Virus record (IMG/VR): IMGVR_UViG_3300046665_000548
Location: 310,001 to 374,000 of that record
Reading direction: 5' to 3' (one strand)
DNA length: 64,000 bases
Under the pieces are notes generated by a model. It was given only the letters and a program-made list of their open reading frames with translations. It was not told the origin of the DNA and searched no databases. Position numbers and translations under genes: made by a program. This document shows positions 5,589-36,956 of the stretch, in pieces. Position 1 is the first letter of the stretch. Each line of letters opens with the position of its first letter.

Positions 5589-6290
5589 ATGAGATACCAC
5601 GAGATCATCAACGAACGTTCCGACAAGGTTTACGATTGGACCTCACCTATCACCCTTTACCGAGGATCGGGGCGCGGCAACCCCGACGCGTTTGCGGACA
5701 CCAAACTGGGATATCCGACGTTCACGGATGTTCGATACGTCGCCAACAAGTATGCGATTAAGGCTAACGACGGAAATGCACACACCCCGGATGGCAAAAC
5801 ATTCGCGTACAAGGTAAAAGTGAATAAGCCATGCCTGTTGTGGATGGTCGAGAATGGCCCGGAGAACGTGGTCGAGATCAATACGCTGCAACAGCGCTTT
5901 GGACTCACTGACCAGCAAATGGTCGAAATCGTGACTCGCACAGTACAGATTTGGCGAACCAACGGCGGCGACCGGCTACCTACGAACATTCAGCCAGAAC
6001 AGATCATCACTGTCCTACACGGGGATGAAGCATTTCTCCGCGATCACTGCATCTATACGGACTCGTACAGGATTGCAGATGATACGTCCTTCCAGACTCT
6101 GGCCAAACAGAAGGGGTACGATTCCTTTGTCTTGAGGGGACCGTACAATGGCGATCATGTGCATGACGGTCTCGATCATAGCGCGGACGTTGACGGCGCG
6201 CTTGAGTGGAAGGTCATGAACCCGGCATGTGTCAAGCTATTGGGCGAGGTTGTTCGTAAAGACGATATGCCTGCTGCGGGAGGCGAATAA
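5589..6290 (+). CDS. ADP-ribosyltransferase-fold (ART-PolyVal-like) protein, putative internal head protein
   Basis: LYRGS...FTD...A.KYA...YKVKVNKP...KGYDS..L...EW motifs; N-terminal MRYHEIINE leader; TAAATA 5 nt before the ATG. Confidence 0.55.
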   Translation: MRYHEIINERSDKVYDWTSPITLYRGSGRGNPDAFADTKLGYPTFTDVRYVANKYAIKANDGNAHTPDGKTFAYKVKVNKPCLLWMVENGPENVVEINTLQQRFGLTDQQMVEIVTRTVQIWRTNGGDRLPTNIQPEQIITVLHGDEAFLRDHCIYTDSYRIADDTSFQTLAKQKGYDSFVLRGPYNGDHVHDGLDHSADVDGALEWKVMNPACVKLLGEVVRKDDMPAAGGE

Positions 6291-6291
6291 G

Positions 6292-6954
6292 ATGGAGATG
6301 AGAAAGCTTATAGACCTCACCAATGAGTCGGTACTGAACGAACTCCAGGGTTATCGGGACGGCACACTCGATGACGTACAGCAGGCGCTGACTGGAAGCA
6401 CGAAGAACCACGATGTTCTAGCAACGTTTCAGAGCTTTCTTGCCCAGAAGGGTTTCAAGGTTATTCATTCTGGCGGCTTCGGGATCGTCTTCTCTAGGCC
6501 CGACTTGAACTACGTGATCAAAGTCTTCTTGGATGACCCCGCCTATTTGAAGTTTCTGCAATTTTGCTTCAGTAGCTCCGATCCTCATTTGCCCAAGTTT
6601 CGAGGGAAGCTGATCCCTATCCTGAAGGGGCGCATCCATGCAGTTCGCATGGAACGCCTCAATCCGATTAGCTCGGGCTACGGCAATCTGATTTCAAGCC
6701 TGGAAGAATTCGCGGTCTCTCACTTTGACCCCGAAGGTTTCATAAACGACTGTCACCAGTACGGTGATCCCCGAAATATGGGGCTGCTAGAGCAGAATAA
6801 GGGCGTATTGGAAACCCTGGATAGATTACGAGCGCTGGAGACGCCAGACATTCGCTTCGATCTAAAGCCAGACAATTTCATGATGCGCGGTGACGTTCTG
6901 GTCGTAACCGATCCATTCTATTCTCATTCGGCTTGGATGCGCGGAATCGCCTAA
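6292..6954 (+). CDS. T7 gp0.7-like protein kinase
   Basis: Gly loop SGGFGIVF, YVIKV, PHLPKF, catalytic DLKPDN, VVTDP; start moved to ATG 6292 (GGGAGG upstream); paralogue of 34181..34828. Confidence 0.7.
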   Translation: MEMRKLIDLTNESVLNELQGYRDGTLDDVQQALTGSTKNHDVLATFQSFLAQKGFKVIHSGGFGIVFSRPDLNYVIKVFLDDPAYLKFLQFCFSSSDPHLPKFRGKLIPILKGRIHAVRMERLNPISSGYGNLISSLEEFAVSHFDPEGFINDCHQYGDPRNMGLLEQNKGVLETLDRLRALETPDIRFDLKPDNFMMRGDVLVVTDPFYSHSAWMRGIA

Positions 6955-7076
6955 CTGAACTGGGTTACAATAATATCGATTCCTCCATAAATATTTCCAG
7001 GTGGGATCAGATGAAAATTGACGTTCTAGTAAAAGTCGTGACAGTCGGCCCTCGCCGTATGCGAGAGCGGTAACTC

Positions 7077-10000
7077 ATGGCCATTACAGTATCCCGCTTT
7101 GAAAACTTTATATTCAATTCAAAAGACGCTGACGACAGCACTCTTTTGCGTGACGACCAGGGTTTTCTGCTTGTCGATGACGGTAGTAACCCGCTTCTTG
7201 ACGAAGATGGCAGTTCGTATCCCGTAACTCCTCCGATCAATATCCTGGTCGGGATAGACGACAATCAGATCATCGCTAGTTTTACGAGTTCCGACATTGG
7301 TGCGGTTACCGTAACCGCCTCGTCTACCTCCAGCGTTGGTCAATTCACGAACACGGCCAATAATTATGCCCTCGGGTCCGCGAGCCAAACGGTTGGGGCC
7401 TTCTCGACCACCACGGTTATTTCAGCAATCGCTTCGGCCTCGGGCGCGAACGCAATCGAATCGTTCTCGTCTGCGGGAACTTTGCGCGCTGTTCCATCAT
7501 TGTCGGCCAACCAGACGATCACTGGTTTTAGCGATACGGCAAACGGACTCGTAACGGCATCCGGTTCGGCTTCGCCAACAATCGGGACGTTCATAAGCTC
7601 CGCTATTGAATCAACAATCGTTAGCTCCTCGACCGTATGCCAAATTAACCCGTTTGTTAGCGCCTCGATTGGCTTTGTTAGAGCAACTGGTTCGTCGGCC
7701 TTATCAGTCGCTCCCATAACATCGACATCGGTTGTGTCCGCCGTCGCGACGCTTTCTGGATCGCAGGTTATTGGTGCATTCGTTGACGCCGGAACTGGTC
7801 TGGCAGTTGTCAGTAGTTCAACCGTTTCGGTTATCAGTCCGTTCACGGTAACCGCGAACAGTTTCGCCCGAGTATCATCTAGCACGGCTTCCCAGGTTGG
7901 TGCTGCTACAACTAGTTCGGCTGCGGCAGTAACCGTGGCGGGTTCCGCCGCACAGTCAATGGGCGTGCTTACACCGACCACATCCGTGGCCGTCACCGAC
8001 GCCGCTTCGGTAGCACAAACAATCGCGATATTCACCAATACAGCGAGCGCAGAACGTGTTGTATCTGGATTGGCATCGCAGTCGTTTGCGGCGTTCACAA
8101 ACACGTCGAATGCTTCAACTAAAGTTTCGGTTACTGCATCCCTAACTCTGGAGCCATTTACAGAATCTTCGAGCGGTACCGTTCAAGTATCGGGCGTGAT
8201 CGTTAATTCTAGCGGACCGTTCGCGAGTACGTCTAATGCGTCGAGCACGGTTGCGGCATCCGCCGCACAGTCGTTTGATGCGGCAACCACAATTTCACTT
8301 GCCTCGAATAAAGTATCTATAACGGCCAATCAACTTGTTGCTCCAATTGTAGAAGCAGCAACTAGCGCGACGGTAGTTACCGGTTTGGTCGTGCAGACGG
8401 TTGGGGCGTTTTCGGCCTCTTCAAGTGTGTCCGTCATATCAACAGGTTCCGCCTACCTACCGGCTTCTAATCACACAGATGATGAAGATTTCGCGGGAAT
8501 TGGTCCGTTCAAGAACATCGCGGCGGTTGGCGACACTTTTGTTTCCGGCGTCGCAAACCAGTCCTTCGCGGTCTTCGTAAACAATTCATACGATTCGGTG
8601 TTGGCAAGTGCGTCGGCAACATCTGTTATTGACCCGTTCACGAACACATCTGATGGCGATGTTCGAGTATCAGCAACTGTAGCTCAAATCATCTCGAATG
8701 TTTCGTCTGCATCTACCGTCCGAGGCGTGGTGTCTGTCTCGGCGTCTAATCTGATTACGCCGTTCACGACGACAACAGTCATTAGCGTTATCTCGACTGG
8801 CTCCGCAATCCAAACCATCGAAGGCCACACAAGCACGGGTTCTATTTCTGCCGTAGCTGGTATCGTTTCGACAACATCAGTAGCCCCGATTACTTTGGTA
8901 GCGACCGGCGTTAGCATCGTGTCAGCGACGACCTCAAGCCTTGTTGGGCCGGTATCGTCCGTTACGGCTGGCTCCATCATAGTATCGGGCTCAGCGACAC
9001 AGACTTTCGATAACGTTACTTCAATATCGAACAATTTCTCGCCAATGTCTGGCGATGCCGTCCAGCTTATTGGCCCAGCCACGAGCGCATCAATTACGCT
9101 CAACCTAGTACGATCATCAGTTACGCAAACGTTTGGTGCATTTACGGGTACGGCCTCCTCCTCGGCGCAGGTCAGTAGTTCGAACACTACTACACTTACG
9201 CCCATCATATCGTCGGCGGAAGGTAATGCGCGATACATCGGTTCCGTTGATGTCACTATTGAGGAATTTATTAGCACGGCGGATGGATGTGTTCAACGCG
9301 TTGACGGACTTGCAGATAGCGTTGTTGGCGATTTCATATCAACTGCGATCACGCGCTCCATCAATTCAGCAACCGCAACCCAGACGTTTGACGACTTTAC
9401 CCAAGCATCGGGTGGAAGCCAGGAAATTCGGGTCTGGGGCACGTCAGAGATCAATAACGCATCGTCAAATGCGTTTGGCTTCGCGCAGGTTTCCGGTGTA
9501 TCTGCGGCTCTAATTGGTCCCCTTAGTACGAATGGAGCGGCCAACGCGGTTGTATCAGGAACCCCACTCGGGGTCATCGAACCGTTCTCTGACATAGCAT
9601 CCGTGATGGTGACGGTTTCGTACTCAGGAACCGTCACGATTCCCTCACTGATCAGCACGACTGCGGGTACCGCAACCAATGTCACTTACGGTCAGAGCAC
9701 GATTGGAAACTTTACATCTATCGACGTTGCCGGTCCAATTGTAGTCGCACGACCAGCGACCCAGGCGATAGGCATCTTCACGAACGTTGCAAGCTCGAAG
9801 GCTATCGCTGGTTTGACCGCTGCGACCGTGCTGCAAATCACCTGCGCGGCAAGCGGCACGATTACCGTCTCGGCATCGGTAGATCAAACGCTGCAAGATT
9901 TCGATAACGAGACAAACTATATTCCGACCGGCATGCCGGATATGGTTCTGCCAGATGTAATAAGCTCGGGAAGCGCAAAGACCAGAATATTTGGTTACGG

Positions 10001-10652
10001 GCTCAGTGCCGTGCAGCCATTTTCGACGGATAGCATTGGCTACCGTATAGCTTCGGGAACTGCTAACGGAAGCATCGGACTGCCAACGGGCACGATCTCC
10101 GCTAATGTACCCGTGTCGGGATCAATCACCGATCTTGTCGCACCGCTACTGAGCATCAGTACGGTTAAGGTAGCCATTGTTAGCACACCAATCATCTCTG
10201 ATATTGTGATGCCGGGTGACCGTGCATACGGTTTGTTGGGATCGAAGAAGAAGATCACTCCTCCTCTCTATCCGTACAATATATTCGATACGCCGCCGAT
10301 CAAGCGCACGCGCTATGAGGTTCTTGGCATGGAGGCGGCTTGCTTCGTCATCAAGATGAACAATTTGCCGATGCAATTGAGACTATCGCGCCTGCCGAGT
10401 TTGAATGGTTTCCAGGATAACACGCTACGAGTTTGGATCAGTCGTGCCCCTATGAGTGCGTCAGTAAAGAACGGCGCTCTTTGGTATCTCAACAAGCGCG
10501 GATTGATAGTTAAAGTCCTTCCCTTGAACGTACAAGGGGACCATTTCTCGGTCGAGGTCGGACAAGGGGACTACTTTTTGAACGTCCAAAACCTTGAAGG
10601 GAAGGCAACCCAAATCTTCCTAAATCCCGCGACGACGATAATGACCGCATAA
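7077..10652 (+). CDS. Giant 21-aa-repeat fibre/scaffold protein (1191 aa)
   Basis: 21-aa periodicity; acidic LLxDDG motifs near the N-terminus; shared C-terminal domain (QDNTLRVWIS...GDYFLNVQN). Confidence 0.8.
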   Translation: MAITVSRFENFIFNSKDADDSTLLRDDQGFLLVDDGSNPLLDEDGSSYPVTPPINILVGIDDNQIIASFTSSDIGAVTVTASSTSSVGQFTNTANNYALGSASQTVGAFSTTTVISAIASASGANAIESFSSAGTLRAVPSLSANQTITGFSDTANGLVTASGSASPTIGTFISSAIESTIVSSSTVCQINPFVSASIGFVRATGSSALSVAPITSTSVVSAVATLSGSQVIGAFVDAGTGLAVVSSSTVSVISPFTVTANSFARVSSSTASQVGAATTSSAAAVTVAGSAAQSMGVLTPTTSVAVTDAASVAQTIAIFTNTASAERVVSGLASQSFAAFTNTSNASTKVSVTASLTLEPFTESSSGTVQVSGVIVNSSGPFASTSNASSTVAASAAQSFDAATTISLASNKVSITANQLVAPIVEAATSATVVTGLVVQTVGAFSASSSVSVISTGSAYLPASNHTDDEDFAGIGPFKNIAAVGDTFVSGVANQSFAVFVNNSYDSVLASASATSVIDPFTNTSDGDVRVSATVAQIISNVSSASTVRGVVSVSASNLITPFTTTTVISVISTGSAIQTIEGHTSTGSISAVAGIVSTTSVAPITLVATGVSIVSATTSSLVGPVSSVTAGSIIVSGSATQTFDNVTSISNNFSPMSGDAVQLIGPATSASITLNLVRSSVTQTFGAFTGTASSSAQVSSSNTTTLTPIISSAEGNARYIGSVDVTIEEFISTADGCVQRVDGLADSVVGDFISTAITRSINSATATQTFDDFTQASGGSQEIRVWGTSEINNASSNAFGFAQVSGVSAALIGPLSTNGAANAVVSGTPLGVIEPFSDIASVMVTVSYSGTVTIPSLISTTAGTATNVTYGQSTIGNFTSIDVAGPIVVARPATQAIGIFTNVASSKAIAGLTAATVLQITCAASGTITVSASVDQTLQDFDNETNYIPTGMPDMVLPDVISSGSAKTRIFGYGLSAVQPFSTDSIGYRIASGTANGSIGLPTGTISANVPVSGSITDLVAPLLSISTVKVAIVSTPIISDIVMPGDRAYGLLGSKKKITPPLYPYNIFDTPPIKRTRYEVLGMEAACFVIKMNNLPMQLRLSRLPSLNGFQDNTLRVWISRAPMSASVKNGALWYLNKRGLIVKVLPLNVQGDHFSVEVGQGDYFLNVQNLEGKATQIFLNPATTIMTA

Positions 10653-11899: not shown

Positions 11900-11921
11900 G
11901 CCATCTTGTGGTAAATACAAG

Positions 11922-12389
11922 ATGAAATTATCCGACATCGCCCCACTTAACGAATTATTTCAGACCCCGGTACCTTACCGATGGGTAGAAAAATCTGAAA
12001 GAAATTGGGAGGGCACGTTCGACGTTAACGGCCTGACGTTCGATTTGTTCTTTTCTTATCAATACAGCTTGAGCCAGAAGGGGAAGCGCGTTTTCACGTT
12101 CGACTTTGTGCAGGATGACGACATGCACAATACGGGTCGGGCTGGTAATTCGTCCGTTAGAGTATTCGCGACCGTCGTCGTTATGTTGGCAGAATTCCTC
12201 TCAAAAATTAAACCGACCGAGGTCATCTTGCATGGCAAGAATGGCGAGAAGGACAGTCTCTATTCGAAAATGGCCAGGGCTCTAAGGGGCACTGCTCAAA
12301 AACTCGGTTATGAGGTCAGCCTGACCTCTGACGCGAGCGAATACAAGACCTTTCACATCCGTCAGATGAAGACCGCTTCTCCAATATAA
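11922..12389 (+). CDS. Hypothetical late protein, putative internal head protein
   Basis: TAAATA 4 nt before the ATG; leader MKLSDIAPLNE. Confidence 0.7.
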   Translation: MKLSDIAPLNELFQTPVPYRWVEKSERNWEGTFDVNGLTFDLFFSYQYSLSQKGKRVFTFDFVQDDDMHNTGRAGNSSVRVFATVVVMLAEFLSKIKPTEVILHGKNGEKDSLYSKMARALRGTAQKLGYEVSLTSDASEYKTFHIRQMKTASPI

Positions 12390-14260: not shown

Positions 14261-17200
14261 GTGACTACATTTGATTCCACCAGGAAAGACTCGGGCATAA
14301 CGCTGTCGAACGGTGATCTCACCGCGTCTAGCGTTACAGATGCTCCTTTGTATGTATTTGGAACAACTGGCAAGAGCACTGGAAAATTCAGCTTCACGGT
14401 ATCTACTCCTAACGGTTTTGATAACAATACATTCAGATTGTATCTTAGTAACCTTCCTTCATCCGGGGCTGCTCCAGCAGCCGGATATCTTGAAATCTAT
14501 CGTTCGGGTTCTGTCTGGGTCATAAACGACACCAATGGTACTAACAATAATTTCGGTGGAAACGCTCCATCATCCAATCCAGACATTCTAACAGTTCACG
14601 TCGATATTACTGCTCGTAAGGTCTACTTCAGTCTTAACGGCGGAGCATATTTCAATAGTGCTGATCCAGTAGCTGGTACTGGAGGATTTTCGATTCCAGG
14701 TACTGGTGATATCTATCCAGCAGCGCGTTTGAGTGCTTCAATATCCGTTAACGTCACTATAAATTTTTTCCCAACGAGTCTTCCATCTGGGTTCAGTTCT
14801 TGGGATGCTCCCAGCATTCAATCAGCCGATGGCACTTCTTCTGGAACTGGTGCTGCCTCTGGTGTAGGCGTAGCTCTAACTGGGACTCGTTTCGATCCAC
14901 TCAAGACAGAAACTGGTCTAACTCTCTCTAATAATGACCTTACTGTTTCGGGAACGGGTGGTGCCGGAAACTACACTTGGAGTACCACTGCCAAAACTAC
15001 TGGAAAATATAGTTTTGAAATTACATCAAGTTATTTCTACACTTCTGATCTTGTCATTTATTTGGATCAGCAATCGGGAGCATCAGCGCAACCGGGTCAG
15101 TTTACTGATGCTGGTGTGCGACTCACTTATCTTGATCCTATCATTCCCGGTTGGGGATGGAACGCTCGTGACACATCTTCAACCAATTTTTTCGATACCT
15201 CGCATCCAATAACAAACGGTTCTACTAATACCGTTCGTGTTCACGTCGATTTTACCGCCAGAAAAATATATTACGAAGTAAACGGTTCGCTTCTATACGG
15301 TGCTGATCCGGTTGCTGGTACCGGTGGTATATCAATGACTACAGTGGGTACACATAAACTGTGTATGGCTGTTAGTATTCAAGCTCATCCATCATCTGCT
15401 ACCGTTAATTTTAATCCAACATCTCTTCCATCTGGTTATACGGGATGGGATTATGTTCACAATTATCAATCAGGTGTCGGCACTGCCGCAGGCGTAGGTA
15501 CGGCAACTGGCAACGGTACAGCAGTCATATTGAGTAGAAGCACTTTCGACTCAGTCAAGACAGATGCTGGTCTTGTTCTCTCAAATGGTAATCGTACCGT
15601 TGCTGGGCCAGGAAATCTTGGCTCTCTCTATACGTGGAGTACAACAAGTAAATCTACCGGCAAATATAGTTTTGCTTTTACATCGAACAATTTTTACAGT
15701 TCTGACGTTCGAATTTGGATAGATGCTCAAGTTGGAACGAACTTACCAAATCAAAATGCGAACGGTGGTGTACGTCTTATTTACATCGATCCTTCGGCTG
15801 GTGGTCAGGGCTGGGGTGTTGTTAGCACGGTTCCTGCGAACACTTACGATGGGTTACATGCCATTTCGGCTAACACGTCATATACTATTCGTGTTCATGC
15901 CGATTTCACGGCTGACCGAGTATATTTCGAATTAAATGGTTCATATCTTTTTGGCGGCGATCCAGTAGCAGGTACTGGTGGCATAGTCATGAGTCCGGCT
16001 GCCGTCCAAAAAATATGTATAATGGTAGACGCGGTTGGCCCAAATCCTACTGGTGGATCAATTGACTTTGCTCCAACATCACTCCCTTCTGGATTTACTG
16101 CATGGGATGAAACACTTGGCACATCTGCTGGTACGTCAACGGCATCCGCTGTTGGTGCCGTAGCACCGCGTGGTGATGCCGCTGGCACGTCAACCGTATC
16201 TGGAGTCGGCGTCGCCTATCGACCCACACTTAAATTCTCTGCTGCGAACTCAGCAACCGCAACGACCGTAAGTATTCCGACTCACGAAGTCGGTGACTTG
16301 ATCGTGATCTACGCGATGCGTGAGAACGCTACGCCGCCAACACTTGCATCTGGCTTCACGAGCATCACGACTAACACTACAACGTTATTTGGCAGCATCT
16401 TAGGCTATCGTATTGCCACGGCCACTAATACAACATCCGGTACATGGACGAACGCACAAGAACTTATAGTCCATGTCTACAAACCACGAACCGGTGGTGC
16501 TATTCGTATCGGCAGCAGCGTTGTTGCGGTCGGTACCAGCACAACCCTGTCATGGTCTGCATTGACTCCACAGCGCACCAATAGCACGTCGTGGATTGCT
16601 GCATTCGGCGGTCATCGTTCCATTAACACGACATTGGAATCGCCACCTACCGGAATGGTCCTGCGAAATAATCTGGTAGATTCGCTCGCAGAAGTAGCCA
16701 GCTTCGATACGAATGGTGCTGTCAATTCGTTTGCCCTGTCAACAAAGACACCGGGCGGTACTGCTTCTGGTTGGGGTACAATCGTTGTTGAAATTCAAGA
16801 CCTTGCACAAATCATGCAAGGCAGTGCTTCTGGCGCAGGTTCAGCAACAGCAGTAGGTAACGCTGTAGGCATCATAACTGGTGTAGGTAATGCAACTGGC
16901 AATTCTACTGTAACTGCTTCTCCTAATATCTCTCGTCGCGTAACCTCATTCCCTGGAACGAACCCTGCATCATTCAATGGAGTAGCAACCAATAGTGATG
17001 GTTCGATCATGTATGCTGCACCATACAATGATTGTATTCTAAAGTCAGTCAATTACGGCGTTACATGGACTCAGCTTGCCGGTACATCGAATTTTTGGCA
17101 GGGCGTTGCTACATCTCATAGTGGCCAAGTTGTTGCAGCAATGGTACCCGGTGGAAGCATCTGGGTATCAACCGATTATGGTGCATCATGGACTGAAGCA

Positions 17201-20200
17201 ACATCTGCTGGCTCACATTACTGGCTTTCAATTGAAGTATCTGGCGATGGATCAACTATCATCGCTGGTGATGCTGATACAGGTGGCCGTGTATATGTAT
17301 CACACAACTCAGGTACGACGTTCACTGCTGTTGCAGGCTCGCATCCATGGCTTGGAGTTGCTTCATCATCTACCGGCTCTGTACTATATGCAGTCGGGGA
17401 TACGGGCAACTACGTTCAGAAATCGACAAATGGTGGTACGAGTTGGTCTTCACTGACAGCAGGACCAACCGGCTGGAATGGCGTCGATTGCTCTAGCGAC
17501 GGTCAGACAGTCGTTATCATCGGGTCAGGTAATGCGGCTAAGGTATCGACAAATGGCGGTACCTCGTGGGCTGATTGCCCAACTAGCGGTTCATTCAATA
17601 ACTGGAGCAACATCAGTGTATCCGACACTGGCCAATATATCGTACTTGCTGATAATACCGACTATATCTGGTTCTCTAGCAATTACGGTACTTCGTTTGT
17701 CAAGCAGAATCAGCCAGGATTCGGTCAACGTATTTGGATATCTGTGGACATCTCTTCAGATGGACAGTGGATCATTGCTGGCGAGTATGATGATGGTAGT
17801 GGCAAGGGCCAGATATATGTAATCAACTACTCTCGTCCCGTCTACGCATCTGGTTCTGGCACATCTAGCGGTATTGGCACAGCGGCTGCCGTTGGTAAAC
17901 CAATGTCGATTGGTCCGGCAGTTGTCTATGGCGCGACACTTGCCACCAACGATACGAACGTTAATATGTCGTTTCGCGTTGTTGCTACAGTTGTTGAAGC
18001 ATCAGATGGGCATCTTCGCATAACTTTTCAGTCTGGTTCAGGAGGTACCCTCGGTATTTCTCATGCCTCATTTGGCAAGTGGGATACTAATACTGGCTCA
18101 GCGGATACAACGGGAACACCTATCAAACTGACGTTTGGCGGGGCTGATACGTTCCAGATGAGCGGAACGGTTACCTCTGATTACGTCAATCACTCAGCAT
18201 CGTTCTCGCTCGTTCCTGGCGAAAAGATCGTCGTCATTTACGATACCACTTCATTTGGCGATGAACGCTATAGTGGTTCACTATCGGGTGTTGAAACGTG
18301 GTTCAAGGTTGGTACTTCATGGAGTACCCCGAACGTAACCGGATTCACAAAGCTTGCAGCGACCAACTATTCCGTTATAGCAATTGAATCAGTTAAGAGC
18401 TTTGAAATTCTACCATACGCTGGACCTACAGTTCGTTCAGTATCTAACACTGCGTATGTTAGTACGAGCAGCTTAGTTCTTAACAAGCCTACGGGAACCG
18501 TAGATGGCGATATTATGATCGCTCATACGTTTTCTGGCGTTGATTTCTATAACGACGGAACGTTCACTGCACCAGCAGGATGGACGTTGCTGACTGGTTT
18601 TCCGACAGCGGTAGACGTAAGTAACTTCTACGGTAAAATGTTTGTGTACTGGAAGCGAGCTTCTAGTGAAGGAAGCTCATACACCTTTACACAGAATAGA
18701 GACTTTTATACTCAGGGTGAAATCATCACGATCCAGGGCGCTGTTGCATCTGGTGATCCGATTGATGTTATCGGAATAGCTACAGGTCTTAGCCAGACAA
18801 GTGTCGTTAGCTCGGTCACCACTTCTGCTGATAACGAACTCGTATTGTATTTGTCGCACGACTGGGAAGGTAATGGAGCATTATCTCCTCCCGCTGGCTT
18901 TACTGAGATTTTAGACGGTCTTATCTATTCAGCATCTCGCCAACTTTCATACGCTTCAGCAACGGGTTCCGTAGCACAAGTTAACGGTAATCTCGGCGCA
19001 GGTGCTCCATTCGCCGCGTCTCTAATCGCGATTGAACCAGCCATCGCCAGTGTATCTGCTAACATCACCGTATCAGGCATCGTTGCCAACAGCGCGGTGG
19101 GCTCTCCGACACAAATCGGAATCAGTTATACCGCTGTCTCTGGAGTTACGGCTGGAACAGCGATTTCGGCACCGACAACGCAAGGCACGGCTAATAAGAG
19201 CATAACTGGCGTCTCTGCTGCCACACAAATTGGCACGGTTTCGACTATCGGCAGCGCTAACAAGGCACTGTCTGGTGTTTCGGCATCGAGCGCTGTCGGC
19301 GTTGCCACTGACAGGACGACAAGCAACGTAGCAGTTTCGGGCGTAGCAGGATCGTCTGTAATAAGCAGCGTGACTACTATTGGCCGCGCAGTTGTCTCTG
19401 CTTCTGGTGTGCAGGCATCAACGGCGGTCGGGATTGTCGCTAAAATTGGCAATGCAAACATCCTTGCGCCATCTACGACCGGTACGGGTCAGGTGGGAGG
19501 AACAGTTAATTCTGGCACGTCAAATGTAGCGCTGTCCGGAGTAAGCGCCGCATCGGCAATTGGCACGACAACAAACATTGGAAATGGAAACGTCCTTGCG
19601 ACCTCGGCGTCCGGCTCCGCTGATGTTGGAGTCGCTACCGGGGTTGGGACGACCACAGCTAGCATTGTAATTTCAGGAGTTTCTGGAACAGCAACTGCAA
19701 ACGCTGCTACAATTGGCTCAACGAACAACATTTCACTGTCGGGTGCTTCCGCAGCGACCTCCGTTGGAAGCACCACTGAGAGTGGTTCTAACAACGTCAA
19801 TATCTCCAGCACGACCGCATCAACCTTCGTCGGTTCTCCAAATGTGGGCGGGCAATCGGCTGCGGTAAGTGGGGGCGTTTCGGCGTCAACGTCATCTGGC
19901 ACGACATCCATCTCCAGCAGCGCTAATGTGCCTATTTCTGGGGCTAACGCGGCCGGTGCGGTTGGATCGCCTACGAAAATCGGATCGGCAAATGTTGCGA
20001 TTACATCAGTATCCGCCAGTGGTCAGGCCCAAACGCTTACCGGTATCGGTTCGGTTCAAATCGCCGCTACTGGTGTTCAAGGCGCAACAAGTAGTGGATC
20101 GCCAACTGTTTCGGGTGAAGCGTTTGTAGCGATTTCCGGTGCCTCGGCTAGCGTTGTTGCACAATCAAATACGGTAACGACGACTGCATCTGCGACGGTG

Positions 20201-31577: not shown

Positions 31578-31697
31578 ATGAAAAAATCCATGATGAAAAT
31601 AACTCGGCTCGTCCGAGAGTGATCACAAAGTAGAATCGCAACCATTGCGCGGTCGATATCTTTTTTTTCGGGCGACTTCGTGGGTCCTAAATAGAGC

Positions 31698-32897
31698 ATG
31701 CGTGATTTCATCGACGGCGTTGCTTTGAGCAAAGCTTTTCAAGGTATTCTATTCCATGGTTCTCCCAACCATAAGCTGATCATTGACCACGAGAACGGCT
31801 CGCTATTCACGACGTTCGATGATGCGTGCAACTATGGTCCGAACGTCTTTGAATGCCGTGTAAACCTGCGCCGCCCATACACGCTGACCTCAGCCGATAA
31901 TCCACATGACCTAATGAATAGCCTTGGAAACGAAGGCTACGACGGTTGTATTATGGACCAGGATGGCGTTCGGAAGATTATCGTATTCGACGCCAAGTCG
32001 ATCACGTTCATTAAGCATCATGACGCCGCGTGTGATCTCGATGAAATGGACATTGAACAGAACGTTATCCTGAAAGAGTTTCGTCCAGGAGCCGGACAAC
32101 ACGTCTTGATGATCACCGGCAAGCTCGCCAAAGCCGGACTTGATCGCGTCATGAAGGCCCTAGGTACGGAAGACTTCACTTATGAAATCCGAAACCTAGA
32201 TATTGCAGTTGCAGCCTGGATCACGACGGACCTGATCAAAAATTCAATCGAAGACCTGGAAGGGGTCGATCTGATCCTGATTCCAGGCAAAGCCACGGGC
32301 GACGAAGAGCAGCTTGCGAAAGACCTTGGGGTAAAGGTCATGCGCGGTCCGGTCTGCTACAGCGAGCTTCCTGTGTTCTTCGAACACCACGGTGTTGAGA
32401 TCGATCCTGAAGGCATCATCCGGCCCAAGATCATCGTTCTGGGTGATGAGGCTGAGTACGCCGAAGCACTGAGCAAAACATACGAAGTACCGCACCTCAC
32501 GATTCACGAGATGCTAGACAGCCTCGGGAAGGAAGATGATCTTGTTCTGAAGATCAGCGAATTCATCTCGGATGGTGCGCCCGTCCCGCATTACCTGATG
32601 GCAGAACTCGTACGCAGTCGCCTTGTCATGCAGGATGTTCAGAAAGGCTACGTGCTGGACGGCTATCCCCACACGCCGCGTGACGCTATCTGGATGGATG
32701 ACATTAAACCGCAGCCGGACGTGATTGTTTCAATGGGATCGGCAGACCCTGAGGTGGTTGAGCACTATACGGGGAACCCGGCGCTCGTAGAGGTCGATTC
32801 ATCGGACCCAGAACGCACAATGTCGCTCCTCTACACGGGCGTCGAGATGTTGATGAGACAGTGCGTAAAGCCGGGAATGGCTAATACGAAAAAATAG
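31698..32897 (+). CDS. Fusion: ART-like domain + DUF6513-like domain + degenerate adenylate-kinase-like domain
   Basis: FHGS...YGPNVFECRVNLRRP...GYDG; ITGKLA..GL.RV...VAA.IT...LIPG...GD...LGV.V.RGP....LP.FF; GYVLDGYP with no P-loop. TAAATA 4 nt upstream. Confidence 0.65.
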   Translation: MRDFIDGVALSKAFQGILFHGSPNHKLIIDHENGSLFTTFDDACNYGPNVFECRVNLRRPYTLTSADNPHDLMNSLGNEGYDGCIMDQDGVRKIIVFDAKSITFIKHHDAACDLDEMDIEQNVILKEFRPGAGQHVLMITGKLAKAGLDRVMKALGTEDFTYEIRNLDIAVAAWITTDLIKNSIEDLEGVDLILIPGKATGDEEQLAKDLGVKVMRGPVCYSELPVFFEHHGVEIDPEGIIRPKIIVLGDEAEYAEALSKTYEVPHLTIHEMLDSLGKEDDLVLKISEFISDGAPVPHYLMAELVRSRLVMQDVQKGYVLDGYPHTPRDAIWMDDIKPQPDVIVSMGSADPEVVEHYTGNPALVEVDSSDPERTMSLLYTGVEMLMRQCVKPGMANTKK

Positions 32898-33195: not shown

Positions 33196-33243
33196 ATGAT
33201 GATGAATCGCAACAATTCGAATAATATCGAGGGCCACGCATAA
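33196..33243 (+). CDS. Asn-rich attenuator leader peptide MMMNRNNSNNIEGHA
   Basis: ATG ATG ATG AAT CGC AAC AAT TCG AAT AAT ATC GAG GGC CAC GCA TAA: 5 Asn in a 7-codon stretch, upstream of two tRNA-Asn genes. Confidence 0.8.
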   Translation: MMMNRNNSNNIEGHA

Positions 33244-33297
33244 GCGGGGATTGCGATCTGTTATCAGATGCAAGCCGCCCCGCAGGGCGGCTTTTTT
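33198..33297 (+). promoter_or_regulatory. Transcription attenuator (protector 1:2, antiterminator 2:3, terminator 3:4)
   Basis: 33198-33212 pairs with 33251-33265; 33244-33260 pairs with 33265-33283; terminator AAGCCGCCC-CGCA-GGGCGGCTT plus T tail at 33272-33297. Confidence 0.75.
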
Positions 33298-33309
33298 GTT
33301 GTTAGGTGA

Positions 33310-33393
33310 TGGCCGGTGCCCGGAATGGTATCGGAGCAGATTGTTAATCTGTCGAGGGAAACCTCATTGCAGGTTCGAGTCCTGCCCGGTCAG
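33310..33393 (+). tRNA. Non-canonical tRNA with GTT (Asn) anticodon and long variable arm
   Basis: Acceptor TGGCCGG/CCGGTCA, G73; D stem CCG/CGG; anticodon arm GCAGA-TTGTTAA-TCTGT; variable arm GAGG-GAAA-CCTC; T arm GCAGG-TTCGAGT-CCTGC; followed by CCT, not CCA. Confidence 0.8.
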
Positions 33394-33418
33394 CCTGACG
33401 ATCAAAGCGTAGTAGTAT

Positions 33419-33493
33419 TCCTGGGTAGCTCAGCGGCAGAGCGTTCGACTGTTAATCGAATGGTCGCAGGTTCGATCCCTGCCCCAGGAGCCA
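33419..33493 (+). tRNA. tRNA-Asn(GTT)
   Basis: Canonical cloverleaf TCCTGGG/CCCAGGA, TTCGA-CTGTTAA-TCGAA, U1-A72, G73, encoded CCA. Confidence 0.95.
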
Positions 33494-33508
33494 CATTTTC
33501 AGCGAGTC

Positions 33509-33536
33509 TTGACAATTTGTCGAAACATGGTAGTCT
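33509..33536 (+). promoter_or_regulatory. Sigma70-like early promoter
   Basis: TTGACA-N16 (ending TGG)-TAGTCT. Confidence 0.6.
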
Positions 33537-33557
33537 GCGTGAAATAGGACAGCTTCC

Positions 33558-33920
33558 ATGAAACAGCATCTGTGTATTCACTGCAATAAACCCTTCGGGA
33601 GCGAACAGGCTGTCTATAGCCATATGTCGATGAAGCACTCAGTTGAGCAGGCGCAGGCTTGGCAAAAGCGCTGCAAGCAGATTGAGAGGGCTGCGGTGCG
33701 CCTCAAGCGGATCAAGGATGCTTCCGCTGCCCGCAAGGCGGCAGAACGTGCGGCACGCCTCGTTACGCTGTCCACTGGCGATATTGACGATATCATTAAC
33801 GAGATGCGCGACCTGATCAACATGATGGAGCCCTACTATTCTCAGGGCGACTGCGCTAATGATGCTGAGAAGTTGATCACTCGGCTCGAAGCCCTTGCGG
33901 ACGGGCAGCTTGTAACCTGA
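33558..33920 (+). CDS. Protein with N-terminal C2H2 zinc finger
   Basis: CIHCNKPFGSEQAVYSHMSMKH. Confidence 0.7.
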   Translation: MKQHLCIHCNKPFGSEQAVYSHMSMKHSVEQAQAWQKRCKQIERAAVRLKRIKDASAARKAAERAARLVTLSTGDIDDIINEMRDLINMMEPYYSQGDCANDAEKLITRLEALADGQLVT

Positions 33921-33921
33921 C

Positions 33922-34173
33922 ATGACCGGCCGCATGACATACAAGCTGGGCGACATCGCGTACTACCGTGATGGCGCTACGCAGCAACAAGTTCGCATCT
34001 CGAAGGCTAGTCGCACGTTTGCGATTTGTGTACCCTTGCTGACCCGGCATCGTGAGACAATCGACGGTCGGGAGACTGGCACGTGGGCGCGTTGGACGCC
34101 GGTAAACGGAGCACGAAGCAGGCCGCTCAATGTTCGAGTCGGCCATCTTACCCGCACCGCCGATCCGGCCTAA
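33922..34173 (+). CDS. Hypothetical protein
   Basis: Co-directional ORF filling the gap. Confidence 0.45.
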   Translation: MTGRMTYKLGDIAYYRDGATQQQVRISKASRTFAICVPLLTRHRETIDGRETGTWARWTPVNGARSRPLNVRVGHLTRTADPA

Positions 34174-34180
34174 ATATGAG

Positions 34181-34828
34181 ATGCGCCATTTCATCAACCT
34201 CGTAGAGACTGCTTATACCGACCCGTTGGACGAGTTCTTCACTGAGCTTGAACAGAAGGGTATCAAGCCCATCGAAGAGCTACAGAACATCCAAGCCCAC
34301 AAGGCGAAGAAGTTCGGAAATATGATGGAATTCGAAAAGTACATGGAAGGTCTAGGCTTTCACGTATTGGGAACAGGCTGGTTCTCGGCCGTGTTCTCGC
34401 ATCCTAAACTGAACTACGTTTTGAAGGTAGCCAATCTCGACGGCGCTTATCGCAAGTTCGTTGAGTACGCTTTTGCGAATTCGAACAACCCGCATCTGCC
34501 TCGCTTCAAGGGCCAGTTGATGCAGGTCACGTCTGACGTATTCATGATCCGGATGGAGATGCTGAACGAGATCGATCCGTCAACCTATGACGATTCGGTC
34601 AATCCCTGCTTTGCTGCGGCCCAGGCGATCTGCAACGGCGCGTATGGCGCAGAGCCCGACAATAGTCTAACCAGGACGTTCGTGGATATTATCGGCAAGC
34701 TCAAGGGCGTTCTGGTGAAGGCTGGTAGATGGCCAGCCAAACAGATCAGGCTTGATATGAAGGAAGACAACGTGATGTGCCGGGCAGATGGCACAATCGT
34801 TGTCACCGACCCTGTTGCGGTAAGATAA
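34181..34828 (+). CDS. T7 gp0.7-like protein kinase (paralogue 2)
   Basis: GFHVLGTGWFSAVFSHPKLNYVLKV...PHLPRF...LDMKEDNVM...VVTDPV; TAAATA 4 nt before ATG 34181; leader MRHFINLVE. Confidence 0.75.
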   Translation: MRHFINLVETAYTDPLDEFFTELEQKGIKPIEELQNIQAHKAKKFGNMMEFEKYMEGLGFHVLGTGWFSAVFSHPKLNYVLKVANLDGAYRKFVEYAFANSNNPHLPRFKGQLMQVTSDVFMIRMEMLNEIDPSTYDDSVNPCFAAAQAICNGAYGAEPDNSLTRTFVDIIGKLKGVLVKAGRWPAKQIRLDMKEDNVMCRADGTIVVTDPVAVR

Positions 34829-35344
34829 TCATTCAAGCATCATCTTGATCCAAACGTCGTCCGCTGGAGCAAGTTCCTGGACGCTCAAAATGGCTTCACC
34901 CTGATGTTGGTGATCGTCCCATTCAGGACGACATAGCATCCAGTTGCGCCCCTCTAGGCGGCCGATTATATCGTCGGTGAGTGTCTTCTTAGAATTCTTG
35001 ATGTAGTAGTAATTCTCGCGGGGAGGGATTGCGTCAAGCATCCCTTTAAACCGTTCGTGATCGATATTTTCCATAAACCAGACGCAGATGCCTTCCGCGC
35101 TGAACGAACCCATTGGCGACGGAGCCGCGTTATCGTACGAATCGCTTTGGAGCCAATAGCGATCAATCTCTATTGCTTTGAGAAAGTCGATACATCGTTC
35201 GTTTTCGAACGTGCTCATTGGAGAGACGGTCTCGCCCTTCCATCCTTTAAAATACAGACGTGCAGGCTTGGTGCGCTTCTCTTCGTAATCTCCGAAGGAA
35301 AGCGACCAGTGGGACATTTTTAGTACGCGATTTTCGTCTTTCAT
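34829..35344 (-). CDS. Hypothetical protein
   Basis: ORF; start shifted to avoid overlap with the divergent gene. Confidence 0.6.
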   Translation of the reverse strand: MKDENRVLKMSHWSLSFGDYEEKRTKPARLYFKGWKGETVSPMSTFENERCIDFLKAIEIDRYWLQSDSYDNAAPSPMGSFSAEGICVWFMENIDHERFKGMLDAIPPRENYYYIKNSKKTLTDDIIGRLEGRNWMLCRPEWDDHQHQGEAILSVQELAPADDVWIKMMLE

Positions 35345-35402
35345 TTTGACCCAGAATAGTCTGCTGGAATATGGTGAACCATATTTTATTTGGTTCTTTA
35401 TC

Positions 35403-36293
35403 ATGTTGTTGCAGAAGCTCAAAGAGCACGAACTTATTCATCCACCGAAATGGTTGCCGGATAACACAATTTACCTGACCATTATGGGTTCGGTCGCGTA
35501 TGGAGTCTCGTCGGATACATCCGATATGGACCTTTATGGATTCTGTATGCCGCCAAAGGAACTGGTGTTCCCGCATCTTGCTGGAGAAATCCCAGGTTTC
35601 GGCCGCCAGATTGCGCGGTTCGAGCAGTGGCAGGAGCATCACGTCAAGGCTCCAGATTCCAACCAGGAATACGATTTTTCGGTGTACTCCATCGTGAAAT
35701 ACGTCAGTCTGTGTATGGAAAATAACCCTAACATGATCGACAGCCTGTTCACGCCTCGGCGCTGCGTGATCCATTCTACGGCGATCTCGGAGATGATCCG
35801 AGAACGTCGAAAGGAATTCTTGCACAAGGGCGCATGGCACAAGTTCAAGGGCTACAGCTACGCCCAGATGCACAAGCTGCGTGGCAAGTCGAATGCATCA
35901 AATCCGAAGCGTGCAGCGTCTATCCAAGAGGTTGGGTATGATGTGAAATTCGCCTATCATGTCGTCAGGCTGCTGTCTGAGGTTGAGCAGATTCTGATCG
36001 AGGGTGACCTCGACCTGGAGCGCAACCGCGAGCAGTTGAAGGCTATTCGCCGTGGCGAATGGACCATCGATCAGCTTGAGCAACATTTTGCCGACAAGGA
36101 AGCTGTTTTGGAGAACGTTTATGCGAATAGCACGTTACGTCATTCTCCGGACGAGGCAAAGATCAAGACGCTGCTGATCGACTGTCTGGAGCAACACTAT
36201 GGAAGTCTCGATAAAGCTATCGCGAAGGATAAATCGTCAGGTCAACTGATCAGCGAGCTTGAAGCCGTACTGGATCGTTTCCGAGGTGCGTGA
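35403..36293 (+). CDS. Pol-beta superfamily nucleotidyltransferase (RlaP/YcgL-like)
   Basis: GSVAYG.S...SDMD.YG...NPNMID.LF...GYDVKFAYH..RLL...IRRGE. Confidence 0.85.
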   Translation: MLLQKLKEHELIHPPKWLPDNTIYLTIMGSVAYGVSSDTSDMDLYGFCMPPKELVFPHLAGEIPGFGRQIARFEQWQEHHVKAPDSNQEYDFSVYSIVKYVSLCMENNPNMIDSLFTPRRCVIHSTAISEMIRERRKEFLHKGAWHKFKGYSYAQMHKLRGKSNASNPKRAASIQEVGYDVKFAYHVVRLLSEVEQILIEGDLDLERNREQLKAIRRGEWTIDQLEQHFADKEAVLENVYANSTLRHSPDEAKIKTLLIDCLEQHYGSLDKAIAKDKSSGQLISELEAVLDRFRGA

Positions 36294-36485
36294 TGGAGAA
36301 AGACGGACGAGATAGGCATACTCTCGAACTGCATTATGCTTTTCGTAAGCTCGTCAATGGCGGGCTGCTGGAGAATCGGTTTATCACGTTCACTTGCTGG
36401 GTTGGTCAGTACGGTATTGCTAAGGCTTGGGAGCATTTGGCAGCAGGCACAAAAATCAATTTGAACTAGGCTCTCTAAATAACCG

Positions 36486-36956
36486 ATGCGATACGCGGAT
36501 ATTATCAAAGAGAGCCTAGTTCGGAAAACCGTCTATCACGGTAGCCCTACGTTTGATGGAGCCACCCAAATAAGTTTGGGTCATCCAGGTCTGTTTTATG
36601 TAACGGACGATTTGGAATACGCCAAAGATTATGCTCGAAGAGGTTACATAAGCGTCTTCTCGATGCAGATGCAGAACCCTTTAGACTTGCGTGTCGCTCA
36701 AAACATCGAAGAAGCCTACCAGATTTACTCAGCCAATCCTCCGGACGTAGATGAACCGTACAACATCGAAACCGATGCTGGCGAAGAATGGGCTCTCCTA
36801 GTTTCGGAGGATGTGGTGAATCACTTCAAGCAGAAGGGCTTCGATGGTTTCGTGATAAACGAAAGCTCTAACGGGCTATCCTATGCCATCACAAACCCTG
36901 CTCGCCAACTCAAGCTGATAAGCGTAGAGAAGTCCCAACAGATGATGCCTAAATAG
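36486..36956 (+). CDS. ART-fold (ART-PolyVal-like) protein, putative internal head protein
   Basis: VYHGS...GLFYVTDD.EYA..YA...NPLDL...KGFDG..I; leader MRYADIIKE; TAAATA 4 nt upstream. Confidence 0.65.
   Translation: MRYADIIKESLVRKTVYHGSPTFDGATQISLGHPGLFYVTDDLEYAKDYARRGYISVFSMQMQNPLDLRVAQNIEEAYQIYSANPPDVDEPYNIETDAGEEWALLVSEDVVNHFKQKGFDGFVINESSNGLSYAITNPARQLKLISVEKSQQMMPK

What the first reader, a model, noticed from the sequence alone, without database searches (positions are those of the whole stretch)
5589..36956. Dispersed late genes with T4 capsid-targeting-like leaders encode ART-like and kinase effectors
Seen: N-termini MRYHEIINE (5589), MEMRKLIDLTNESVLNE (6292), MKLSDIAPLNE (11922), MRHFINLVE (34181) and MRYADIIKE (36486); four lie directly behind TAAATA and 6292 is co-transcribed with 5589. 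Established: T4 internal proteins carry a ~10-aa capsid-targeting leader cleaved by gp21 after (L/I)xE, and T4 injects the ADP-ribosyltransferase Alt. The MCP here has a matching RLNE site. Inference: a cocktail of enzymes packaged in the head and injected to modify host or defence proteins.
Basis: partly seen in the sequence, partly recalled or inferred. Interest (0 to 1): 0.6.

Follow-up and report, generated by a model that had tools for sequence, protein, structure and literature searches.

The report
Capsid-targeting leaders on phage enzyme cargo
A 607-kb uncultured phage puts a short T4-style N-terminal tag on dozens of small enzymes (ADP-ribosyltransferase-like, kinase-like and others), most likely to load them into the capsid and deliver them with the DNA: a known mechanism, used here on an unusually large scale.

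Summary
Four sit 4-5 nt behind TAAATA; 6292 abuts the stop of 5589.

The window is part of a 607,744-bp virus record. It has a T4-type head module (Gp20 portal, Peptidase_S77 prohead protease, Gp23 capsid protein) and a T4-type late sigma factor.

- **Extent:** about 30-40 ORFs genome-wide start with the same leader, R-x4-[L/I]-x-E near residue 9-11. The motif is strongly N-terminal.
- **Cargo:** the mature parts are mostly unrelated. They include ART-PolyVal-like proteins, T7-kinase-like proteins, GNAT, SAM lyase and NUDIX.
- **Modularity:** orthologues in other contigs carry swapped leader types.
- **T4 match:** the short leader type matches T4 IPII/IPIII at the residues known to drive targeting and gp21 processing.
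- **Virion link:** in the cultured relative Atu_ph07, 23 of 29 leader-matching ORFs are in the published virion proteome (P about 2e-12). One is an ART-PolyVal-like protein.
- **Transcription:** TAAATA also precedes tail-sheath and adaptor genes and leaves no room for a ribosome-binding site, so these late mRNAs are probably leaderless.

Packaging is well supported by inference. Cleavage, injection and targets are untested. This is a new variant of a known kind.

The parts
5578..5583 (+). TAAATA late-promoter-like box, 5 nt before the ATG of the 5589 gene
   Evidence: genome-wide enrichment
5589..6290 (+). 233-aa ART-PolyVal-like protein. The 9-residue leader (5589-5615) ends in I-x-E; invariant Y-R-G-S, F-T-D and L-E-W motifs follow.
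   Evidence: orthologues carry swapped leaders; Atlas: ART-PolyVal clusters, 0.93 by features, TM about 0.5; no Pfam hit
6292..6954 (+). 220-aa T7 gp0.7-like protein kinase with a 17-residue leader (6292-6342) that has a conserved L-N-E at residues 15-17. It follows the 5589 gene by one base.
   Evidence: phrog_15752, E 5.5e-8; paralogue of 34181; orthologue with its own box
11912..11917 (+). TAAATA box, 4 nt before the ATG
11922..12389 (+). 155-aa DUF6934-like protein of unknown function with an 11-residue leader (11922-11954) ending L-N-E. It is homologous to the C-terminal part of the Atu_ph07 virion protein gp482.
   Evidence: E 4e-7; gp482: 9 unique peptides
31688..31693 (+). TAAATA box, 4 nt before the ATG
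31698..32897 (+). 399-aa DUF6513 plus adenylate-kinase-like protein. Its start is leader-like but has no Glu site, so it is a possible uncleaved member.
34171..34176 (+). TAAATA box, 4 nt before the ATG
34181..34828 (+). 215-aa T7 gp0.7-like protein kinase with a 9-residue leader (34181-34207) ending L-V-E. It has a G-rich loop, a V-x-K lysine, and D-x-K-x-D-N and T-D-P motifs.
   Evidence: phrog_15752, E 1.2e-14; tblastn to T7-group 0.7 genes; orthologue in L070 with a box and a different leader
36476..36481 (+). TAAATA box, 4 nt before the ATG
36486..36956 (+). 156-aa ART-PolyVal-like protein with a 9-residue leader (36486-36512) ending I-K-E, followed by the Y-H-G-S motif
   Evidence: PF18760, E 2e-6, 29.0 bits, cut-off 31.2; Y-H-G invariant in 7 paralogues
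59555..60202 (-). Prohead protease, Peptidase_S77 (T4 gp21 family), with its own L-T-E near the N-terminus. This is the presumed leader-removing enzyme.
   Evidence: 55% identical to Atu_ph07 gp204
58294..59535 (-). gp22-like scaffold, probably starting at the Met at 59535. It has 22 [L/I]-x-E sites against about 8 expected.
   Evidence: 36% identical to the Atu_ph07 ORF next to the MCP gene
57015..58232 (-). Gp23-type major capsid protein. The R-L-N-E propeptide site is at residues 50-53 (58074-58085).
60205..61296 (-). 363-aa acidic head-module protein whose N-terminus has two [L/I]-x-E sites within 15 residues. It is the positional counterpart of the Atu_ph07 virion protein gp213.
   Evidence: no BLAST similarity to gp213
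62267..62515 (-). 82-aa protein next to the portal gene, homologous to the Atu_ph07 virion protein gp199
   Evidence: E 3e-18
62529..63989 (-). T4 Gp20-type portal protein (the gene runs to the window edge)

Best explanation
These genes belong to a genome-wide set of roughly 30-40 late genes whose products carry a T4-type capsid-targeting leader of 8-17 residues. The leader has a basic residue, then hydrophobic positions, and ends in [L/I]-x-E. Proposed steps, all inferred unless marked otherwise. (1) A gp55-type late sigma factor directs transcription from the -10-like TAAATA box. The box lies so close to the ATG that the mRNA is leaderless or nearly so. Genes inside tandem arrays are co-transcribed. 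(2) The leader binds the protein to the gp22-like scaffolding core while the prohead assembles. (3) The gp21-family protease cuts after the Glu, as it does in the capsid protein and scaffold, and frees the mature enzyme inside the head. (4) The enzymes leave with the DNA and act at once on host proteins. The ART-PolyVal-like proteins would ADP-ribosylate them. The T7-kinase-like proteins would phosphorylate them. Elsewhere in the genome GNAT, SAM lyase and NUDIX cargo would acetylate proteins, destroy SAM or remove nucleotide signals. Shown here: the sequence features, their statistics, their conservation in relatives, and virion association of leader-bearing proteins in the relative Atu_ph07.
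For: The head module and protease are T4-type. A late sigma factor is encoded (phrog_12791, E 9e-79; T4 gp55 query). TAAATA-N4-5-ATG is 10-fold enriched. It has no -35 element and no SD-like word (3/58 against 131/317). It also precedes tail sheath, head-tail adaptor and virion protein genes. T4 IPII/IPIII start with the known 10-residue CTS; its residues 4 and 7 target and 8 and 10 direct processing, and gp21 cuts after L/I-x-E (PMC9026906). Leaders at 5589 and 36486 keep the aromatic, hydrophobic, Ile and Glu positions in register. The leader motif is N-terminal (28 against 0 against 8 in 236,658). The conserved residues use several synonymous codons. Of 46 candidates, 32 have mature parts with no BLASTP match to any other candidate, and Pfam gives different enzyme families. 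Orthologues of the 5589 protein carry either leader type. Metagenomic relatives keep both box and leader. In Atu_ph07, 23 of 29 leader-regex ORFs are MS-detected virion proteins (140 of 714 proteins; P 2e-12). They fall into 11 BLAST families and include the ART-PolyVal-like gp381 and gp205/gp206 beside the protease gene. The 11922 protein is homologous to virion protein gp482.
Against: There are no proteomic, N-terminal or transcript data for this uncultured phage, and no sequencing run was listed. The Atu_ph07 data show virion association only. They do not show head-interior location, cleavage or injection, and many of the hits are paralogues. The window's ART-like and kinase-like proteins have no BLAST homologue in Atu_ph07. 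The 36486 protein scores just under the Pfam cut-off and the 5589 protein has no Pfam hit. Both AlphaFold models were poor. The profile comparison of the two ART groups gave only 12.7% probability. The 31698 protein has no Glu site. Atu_ph07 and Phosso lack the TAAATA-ATG arrangement, so promoter and leader are separable features.
Confidence: 0.72

Rival explanations
1. The leader is a virion-assembly tag, but the proteins are not injected effectors. They could be structural or decoration components, or enzymes that act in the producing cell or inside the virion, for example on virion proteins or DNA.
For: The Atu_ph07 proteome shows only virion association. Its largest leader family (gp53-gp63, gp408, gp482) has no known function and is abundant in the table. 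The 11922 protein belongs to that family.
Against: The cargo families are typical host-modifying or anti-defence enzymes: ART, protein kinase, GNAT, SAM lyase and NUDIX. The leader ends in the cleavage motif of the head protease. Leader genes sit beside the protease gene in Atu_ph07 and Phosso. T4 proteins with this leader are in the head and are injected (PMC3012670, PMC9026906).
Confidence: 0.15
2. The conserved N-terminus is an RNA-level requirement of leaderless late mRNAs (initial transcribed sequence or a downstream box for translation), not a protein signal.
For: Many leader genes start 4-5 nt after the promoter-like box and lack an SD-like word.
Against: Ten genes in the tandem array at 111185-117636 of the genome carry the leader. 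Eight of them have no box: only the first (spacer 5) and the gene at 115462 (spacer 6) have one. Conserved Arg, Leu and Glu use 4, 5 and 2 different codons. Structural genes behind the same box have no leader. Atu_ph07 has the leaders but not the box arrangement.
Confidence: 0.04
3. The shared N-terminus is inherited from one ancestral gene family, or is a common structural helix, and has no targeting role.
For: Some leader proteins are paralogues: one BLAST cluster of 8 and three pairs. There are tandem arrays.
Against: Thirty-two of 46 candidates have mature parts with no detectable similarity to any other candidate, and Pfam places them in unrelated folds. Orthologues of one protein carry different leader types on a conserved body. 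The motif is tied to position 1.
Confidence: 0.05

Closest known systems
T4 internal proteins IPI, IPII, IPIII and Alt (capsid-targeting sequence plus gp21 processing)
   Same: A roughly 10-residue N-terminal leader ends in [L/I]-x-E. The short type matches IPII/IPIII at the aromatic, hydrophobic, Ile and Glu positions. The gp21-family protease, gp20/gp22/gp23-type head genes, a TAAATA-core late promoter and a gp55-type sigma factor are all present. The leader is shared by unrelated, fast-changing cargo. An ADP-ribosyltransferase is among the cargo.
   Different: There are about 30-40 candidate cargo genes against a handful in T4, and two leader types. The cargo is mainly small enzymes of the kinds found in polyvalent proteins. 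The ARTs are ART-PolyVal-like, not tested against the Alt family here. The promoter box abuts the ATG. The phage is a 607-kb relative of Atu_ph07 and Phosso, not a Straboviridae member. Nothing has been shown experimentally.
Ejection and inner-body proteins of phiKZ, 201phi2-1 and SPN3US giant phages
   Same: Many head-packaged proteins have propeptides removed after Glu by a diverged gp21-like protease (PMC9026906).
   Different: Their cleavage motif is S/A-x-E and no short portable leader has been defined. Those phages carry virion RNA polymerases. Here the protease is a clear Peptidase_S77 member and the motif is [L/I]-x-E.
Polyvalent proteins of phages and conjugative elements (Iyer et al.; ART-PolyVal, PF18760)
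   Same: The domain repertoire is the same (ART-PolyVal, GNAT, kinase-like and nucleotide-targeting enzymes), and so is the predicted role as proteins delivered with the DNA (PMC7824862, PMC9503650).
   Different: Polyvalent proteins fuse the domains into one giant polypeptide. Here each domain is a separate small protein of about 90-500 aa with its own leader.
T7 gp0.7 protein kinase
   Same: PHROG and tblastn similarity and kinase motifs. A recent report credits the T7 kinase with broad anti-defence activity (PMC13645617, listed; not read).
   Different: T7 gp0.7 is an early gene product made after entry. Here the two kinase-like genes have late-promoter boxes and capsid-type leaders, which implies pre-made, delivered kinase.

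Membership tests
T4-type CTS-bearing internal head proteins | N-terminal leader of about 10 residues ending in the gp21 site (L/I)-x-E | tested here: met
   In 27 strong leaders, P3 is Leu or Ile in 26 and P1 is Glu in 26. The 31698 protein lacks the Glu.
T4-type CTS-bearing internal head proteins | Residues matching T4 CTS positions 4 and 7 (targeting) and 8 and 10 (processing) | tested here: met
   T4 IPII/IPIII were read from AF158101 and the roles taken from PMC9026906. Leaders at 5589 and 36486 keep Tyr, Ile/Phe, Ile and Glu in register, one residue shorter. The longer leader type matches only the P3/P1 part.
T4-type CTS-bearing internal head proteins | gp21-family prohead protease and a T4-type prohead (portal, scaffold, MCP with propeptide) in the same genome | tested here: met
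   PF03420 at 95 bits, PF07230 and PF07068. The scaffold is rich in [L/I]-x-E. The MCP has an L-N-E site.
T4-type CTS-bearing internal head proteins | Late expression together with head genes | tested here: met
   This is by sequence only. The TAAATA box is shared with tail sheath, adaptor and virion protein genes. A late sigma factor is encoded. No transcript data were available.
T4-type CTS-bearing internal head proteins | Leader conserved on unrelated, rapidly exchanged mature proteins | tested here: met
T4-type CTS-bearing internal head proteins | Protein present in the purified virion | not testable with these tools
   The phage is uncultured. In the relative Atu_ph07, 23 of 29 leader-regex ORFs are in the published virion proteome, including a homologue of the 11922 protein.
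T4-type CTS-bearing internal head proteins | Leader removed after Glu by the prohead protease; mature protein injected with the DNA | not testable with these tools
   The complex prediction of protease with the 36486 protein gave no verdict. No peptide-level MS data are held.
ART-PolyVal (PF18760) ADP-ribosyltransferases | Profile match over the curated cut-off | tested here: inconclusive
   36486 scores 29.0 bits against a cut-off of 31.2, and 5589 has no hit. Genome paralogues with the same leader score 53.5 and 45.8 bits. The Atlas places 5589 with ART-PolyVal clusters (0.93, 189 of 256 features; TM about 0.5).
ART-PolyVal (PF18760) ADP-ribosyltransferases | ART fold with the first catalytic motif (aromatic-His/Arg-Gly-Ser/Thr) and a catalytic Glu | tested here: inconclusive
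   Y-H-G is invariant in 7 paralogues. Y-R-G-S, F-T-D and L-E-W are invariant in the 5589 family. The AlphaFold models were poor (pLDDT 59 and 53). The best Foldseek hit was the anti-CRISPR entry 6kyf at E 0.08, followed by PARP domains at E about 1.
T7 gp0.7-like protein kinases | Family profile match and kinase catalytic motifs | tested here: met
   phrog_15752 at E 1.2e-14 (34181) and 5.5e-8 (6292). tblastn hits T7-group 0.7 genes. The G-rich loop, V-x-K, D-x-K-x-D-N and T-D-P motifs are visible. No solved homologue was found by sequence.
T7 gp0.7-like protein kinases | Early gene, synthesised after entry | tested here: not met
   34181 has a late-type box and a capsid-type leader. 6292 has the leader and follows the boxed 5589 gene.
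Polyvalent proteins | Many effector domains fused in one very large virion protein | tested here: not met
   The cargo proteins are 88-514 aa with one or two domains each.

The most novel reading that the evidence does not exclude
A clade of huge soil and sediment phages (this 607-kb genome, contigs L043, L069 and L070, and in part Atu_ph07) has turned the T4 capsid-targeting sequence into a general address label. With it the phage pre-loads the head with dozens of separate host-takeover and anti-defence enzymes. The set amounts to an unbundled polyvalent protein, including pre-made T7-type kinase and multiple ARTs. In this lineage the genes are expressed from leaderless late mRNAs. The leader would then be a portable tag for loading foreign proteins into very large capsids.
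Probability: 0.5. Interest if true: 0.72.

Novelty: new variant of a known kind. Interest (0 to 1): 0.62.

Why it matters
If true, it explains part of what the extra capsid volume and the many unknown virion proteins of huge phages are for. It would also give a simple sequence rule for predicting injected proteins in metagenomic phage genomes: a leader, a gp21-type protease and a late box. It identifies candidate anti-defence enzymes that act before any phage gene is expressed. It offers a testable packaging tag in a cultured relative, Atu_ph07. The 102 unassigned virion proteins of Atu_ph07 gain a partial explanation. The promoter-abutting starts add a likely case of systematic leaderless late mRNAs in a phage.

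Tried and rejected
- **Structure models.** AlphaFold2 of the 5589 protein (5-sequence alignment) and the 36486 protein (7 paralogues) gave poor models (pLDDT 59.1 and 52.6), so I make no fold claim.
- **Fold search.** The anti-CRISPR entry 6kyf at E 0.08 and PARP domains at E about 1 are only thematically suggestive.
- **Profile comparison.** hhalign of the 5589 family against the Y-H-G paralogues gave 12.7% probability, aligning only the leader and the first two motifs.
- **Complex prediction.** Complex prediction of the protease with the 36486 protein gave no verdict (score 0.00). This is not evidence either way.
- **DNA search.** Megablast of the window against the phage collection found nothing beyond a tRNA.
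- **Sequencing runs.** The look-up of sequencing runs listed none, so read laying was not used and transcript starts could not be checked.
- **Solved kinase homologues.** None was found by sequence for the kinase-like protein.
- **gp numbering.** I first mapped the Atu_ph07 ART-like ORF to gp358 by accession offset, and that gp is not in the proteome table. Mapping by molecular weight and gene order showed it is gp381, which is in the table.
- **gp213 orthology.** The 60205-61296 protein is not similar to Atu_ph07 gp213 by BLAST. Only position and N-terminus agree.
- **False positive.** One leader-matrix hit, a ribonucleotide reductase small subunit at 559053 of the genome, is a likely false positive.
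- **Typed seeds.** I took the seeds from the genome by rule instead.
Full report
**Context**

The window is bases 310001-374000 of a single 607,744-bp IMG/VR virus record. Its minus strand carries a T4-type head module at the right end. The module holds a Gp20 portal (62529-63989), a Peptidase_S77 prohead protease of the gp21 family (59555-60202), a coiled-coil scaffold and a Gp23 major capsid protein (57015-58232).

The closest cultured relatives by capsid protein are Sinorhizobium phage Phosso (80% identity, 469 kb) and Agrobacterium phage Atu_ph07 (69%, 490 kb). Rak2-like phages follow. Megablast of two stretches of the window against the phage collection found no near match beyond a tRNA.

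**Checking the observation**

TAAATA lies 5 nt before the ATG at 5589 and 4 nt before those at 11922, 34181 and 36486. The 6292 ATG follows the stop of the 5589 gene by one base. In a related contig the orthologue of 6292 has its own box, which confirms that start.

The capsid protein has R-L-N-E at residues 50-53. That is four residues before the stretch that aligns with the N-terminal part of mature T4 gp23. T4's own site is about 15 residues before that stretch, so the position agrees closely but not exactly.

**The pattern is genome-wide and not chance**

- TAAATA occurs 210 times on both strands. Of these, 27 and 44 lie 4 and 5 nt before an ATG. Other spacings give 0-12 each.
- The box has no -35 partner.
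- The ORFs behind it almost never have a Shine-Dalgarno-like word: 3 of 58, against 131 of 317 other long ORFs.
- I seeded a position matrix only from box genes, using the rule Arg, four residues, an aliphatic residue, one residue, Glu. It converged on about 30 ORFs.
- At 14 bits or more it finds 28 ORFs within the first eight offsets, none at offsets 9-16, and 8 among 236,658 internal positions.
- Leader and box are associated (odds ratio 28, P 5e-11).
- The genome also has a tandem array of ten leader genes at 111185-117636. Only the first, and the one at 115462 (spacer 6), have a box.
- The window holds a sixth box gene with a leader-like start but no Glu, at 31698-32897.

**The leader is a protein-level, modular signal**

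The conserved Arg, Leu/Ile and Glu are written with four, five and two different codons. Array genes without a box still carry the leader. Of 46 candidates, 32 have mature parts with no BLASTP similarity to any other candidate.

Pfam assigns unrelated families to the cargo:

- ART-PolyVal, five members, two above the curated cut-off
- GNAT, two members
- S-adenosylmethionine lyase
- NUDIX
- R2K ATP-grasp
- DUF7178
- DUF6513 with an adenylate-kinase-like domain

Four homologues of the 5589 protein from other contigs share 48-80% identity in the body. They carry either the short or the long leader type, some with a second x-x-E site. Contigs L043 (220 kb, syntenic), L070 and the more distant L069 all keep the box and leaders. 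L043 adds a phospholipase-A2-like cargo.

**What the five proteins are**

- **36486:** matches ART-PolyVal just under the cut-off (29.0 against 31.2 bits). It shares an invariant Y-H-G motif with six leader-bearing paralogues.
- **5589:** has no Pfam or PHROG hit. It has invariant Y-R-G-S, F-T-D and L-E-W motifs. The ESM Atlas places it among ART-PolyVal clusters by features (0.93) and by structure (TM about 0.5).
- **6292 and 34181:** paralogues that match the T7 gp0.7 kinase family and T7-group 0.7 genes by tblastn. The kinase motifs are visible in the translations.
- **11922:** a DUF6934-like protein of unknown function.

**Link to T4**

I read T4 IPII and IPIII from AF158101; both begin with the known ten-residue capsid-targeting sequence. 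According to the review PMC9026906:

- the first ten residues of IPIII suffice for packaging;
- residues 4 and 7 matter for targeting and residues 8 and 10 for processing;
- Asp at position 10 blocks cleavage but not targeting;
- gp21 cuts after L/I-x-E.

The leaders at 5589 and 36486 keep the aromatic residue, the hydrophobic pair and the Glu in the same register, one residue shorter. The phage's own protease substrates fit the motif. The scaffold has 22 [L/I]-x-E sites against about 8 expected, and the protease and a neighbouring acidic protein have such sites near their N-termini.

**Late expression**

Other genes directly behind TAAATA are a tail sheath, a head-tail adaptor, several virion structural proteins and a peptidase-bearing virion protein. 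The genome encodes a T4-type late sigma factor at about 390863-391693, minus strand (phrog_12791, E 9e-79). A T4 gp55 query also finds it.

The box is the core of the T4 late promoter, which is established knowledge. Its distance to the ATG suggests that transcripts start at or next to the start codon. That is inference; no sequencing run was listed to test it.

**Independent support from a published proteome**

Attai et al. 2018 (PMC6102473) list the virion proteins of Atu_ph07 found by ESI-MS/MS in Supplementary Table S5. I fetched the Atu_ph07 record. I mapped all 140 table entries to ORFs by molecular weight and gene order.

- Two simple leader expressions match 29 ATG-ORFs of 60 aa or more, and 23 of them are table entries.
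- For the short type the count is 19 of 20.
- Against 140 virion proteins among 714 annotated, this gives P about 2e-12.
- The 23 fall into 11 BLAST families.
- They include gp205 and gp206, encoded right after the protease gene, and the array gp54-gp62.
- They also include gp381, a 170-aa protein with a short leader followed by Y-H-G-S that matches ART-PolyVal weakly.
- The 11922 protein is homologous to the C-terminal part of virion protein gp482 (E 4e-7). Three other leader proteins of this genome, at 70828, 116522 and 254114, also have virion homologues, as do two weaker short-type candidates, one of them the 82-aa ORF beside the portal gene.

The main text of that paper does not contain the words 'internal' or 'prohead'. 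My library searches found no paper linking capsid-targeting leaders to this phage group. Atu_ph07 and Phosso do not show the TAAATA-ATG arrangement, so the leader is older or more widespread than the promoter arrangement.

**Limits**

- Nothing is measured for this phage itself.
- The proteome of the relative shows virion association only. It does not show head-interior location, cleavage or injection.
- The window's ART-like and kinase-like proteins have no homologue in Atu_ph07.
- Structure predictions were poor, the fold search was not significant and the complex prediction gave no verdict.
- Counts of leader genes depend on my own ORF lists, because no gene caller was available.

**Verdict**

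I rate it 0.72.

The kind of system is known. What is new is the scale, the enzyme repertoire (that of polyvalent proteins, split into separately tagged pieces, with late-made T7-type kinases), the likely leaderless late mRNAs, and the occurrence in huge Atu_ph07-like phages.

Noticed in passing
whole genome G000; in the window at 1263(-), 5589, 11922, 31698, 32919, 34181, 36486, 38175(-), 42281, 48786(-), 56945(-): TAAATA sits 4-6 nt before the ATG of about 60 ORFs that lack any Shine-Dalgarno-like word, which suggests systematic leaderless late mRNAs. The arrangement is kept in metagenomic relatives but absent from the cultured relatives Atu_ph07 and Phosso.
   Followed up: partly
G000:C1:109837-111160 (outside the window): Six tandem paralogues of 70-81 aa all start with the same seven residues ending L-T-E. 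They lie directly upstream of the ten-gene leader array at 111185-117636.
   Followed up: no
G000:C1:432299, minus strand (outside the window): A 3670-aa ORF starts with a leader-like N-terminus ending L-P-E. It may be a giant virion protein that uses the same tag.
   Followed up: no
window 1273-5493(-), 7077-10652(+), 14261-22702(+): Three giant ORFs (1406, 1191 and 2813 aa) have no PHROG match at all. The first is syntenic with a 1586-aa ORF in L043 and a 2077-aa ORF in L070.
   Followed up: no
window 56133-56945(-): A 270-aa protein with a weak GDSL-lipase match lies directly downstream of the capsid gene and directly behind a TAAATA box.
   Followed up: no
window 33310-33395 and 33419-33493: Two adjacent tRNA-Asn(GTT) genes. 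The first is 86 nt, which is long for this tRNA.
   Followed up: no
window 39904-41655(-): A 583-aa protein has a C-terminal match to a phage kinase family (phrog_10912). It would be a third kinase-like gene in the window, with no leader.
   Followed up: no
L043:8655-9035: In the 220-kb relative, a 126-aa phospholipase-A2-like protein has both the TAAATA box and a short leader. It sits where this window has the 1191-aa ORF.
   Followed up: partly
Atu_ph07 MF403008, about 41-51 kb (gp53-gp63), plus gp408 and gp482: An array of virion proteins, mostly 29-32 kDa, nearly all starting with the short leader. The published paper lists them as hypothetical proteins and does not mention the shared N-terminus.
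   Followed up: partly
G000:C1:147547-148068 and 15188-15958 (outside the window): A NUDIX hydrolase (box, leader-like start) and an R2K ATP-grasp protein (leader-like start, no box) may belong to the same cargo set. Atu_ph07 virions also contain two NUDIX proteins at single-peptide level.
   Followed up: partly
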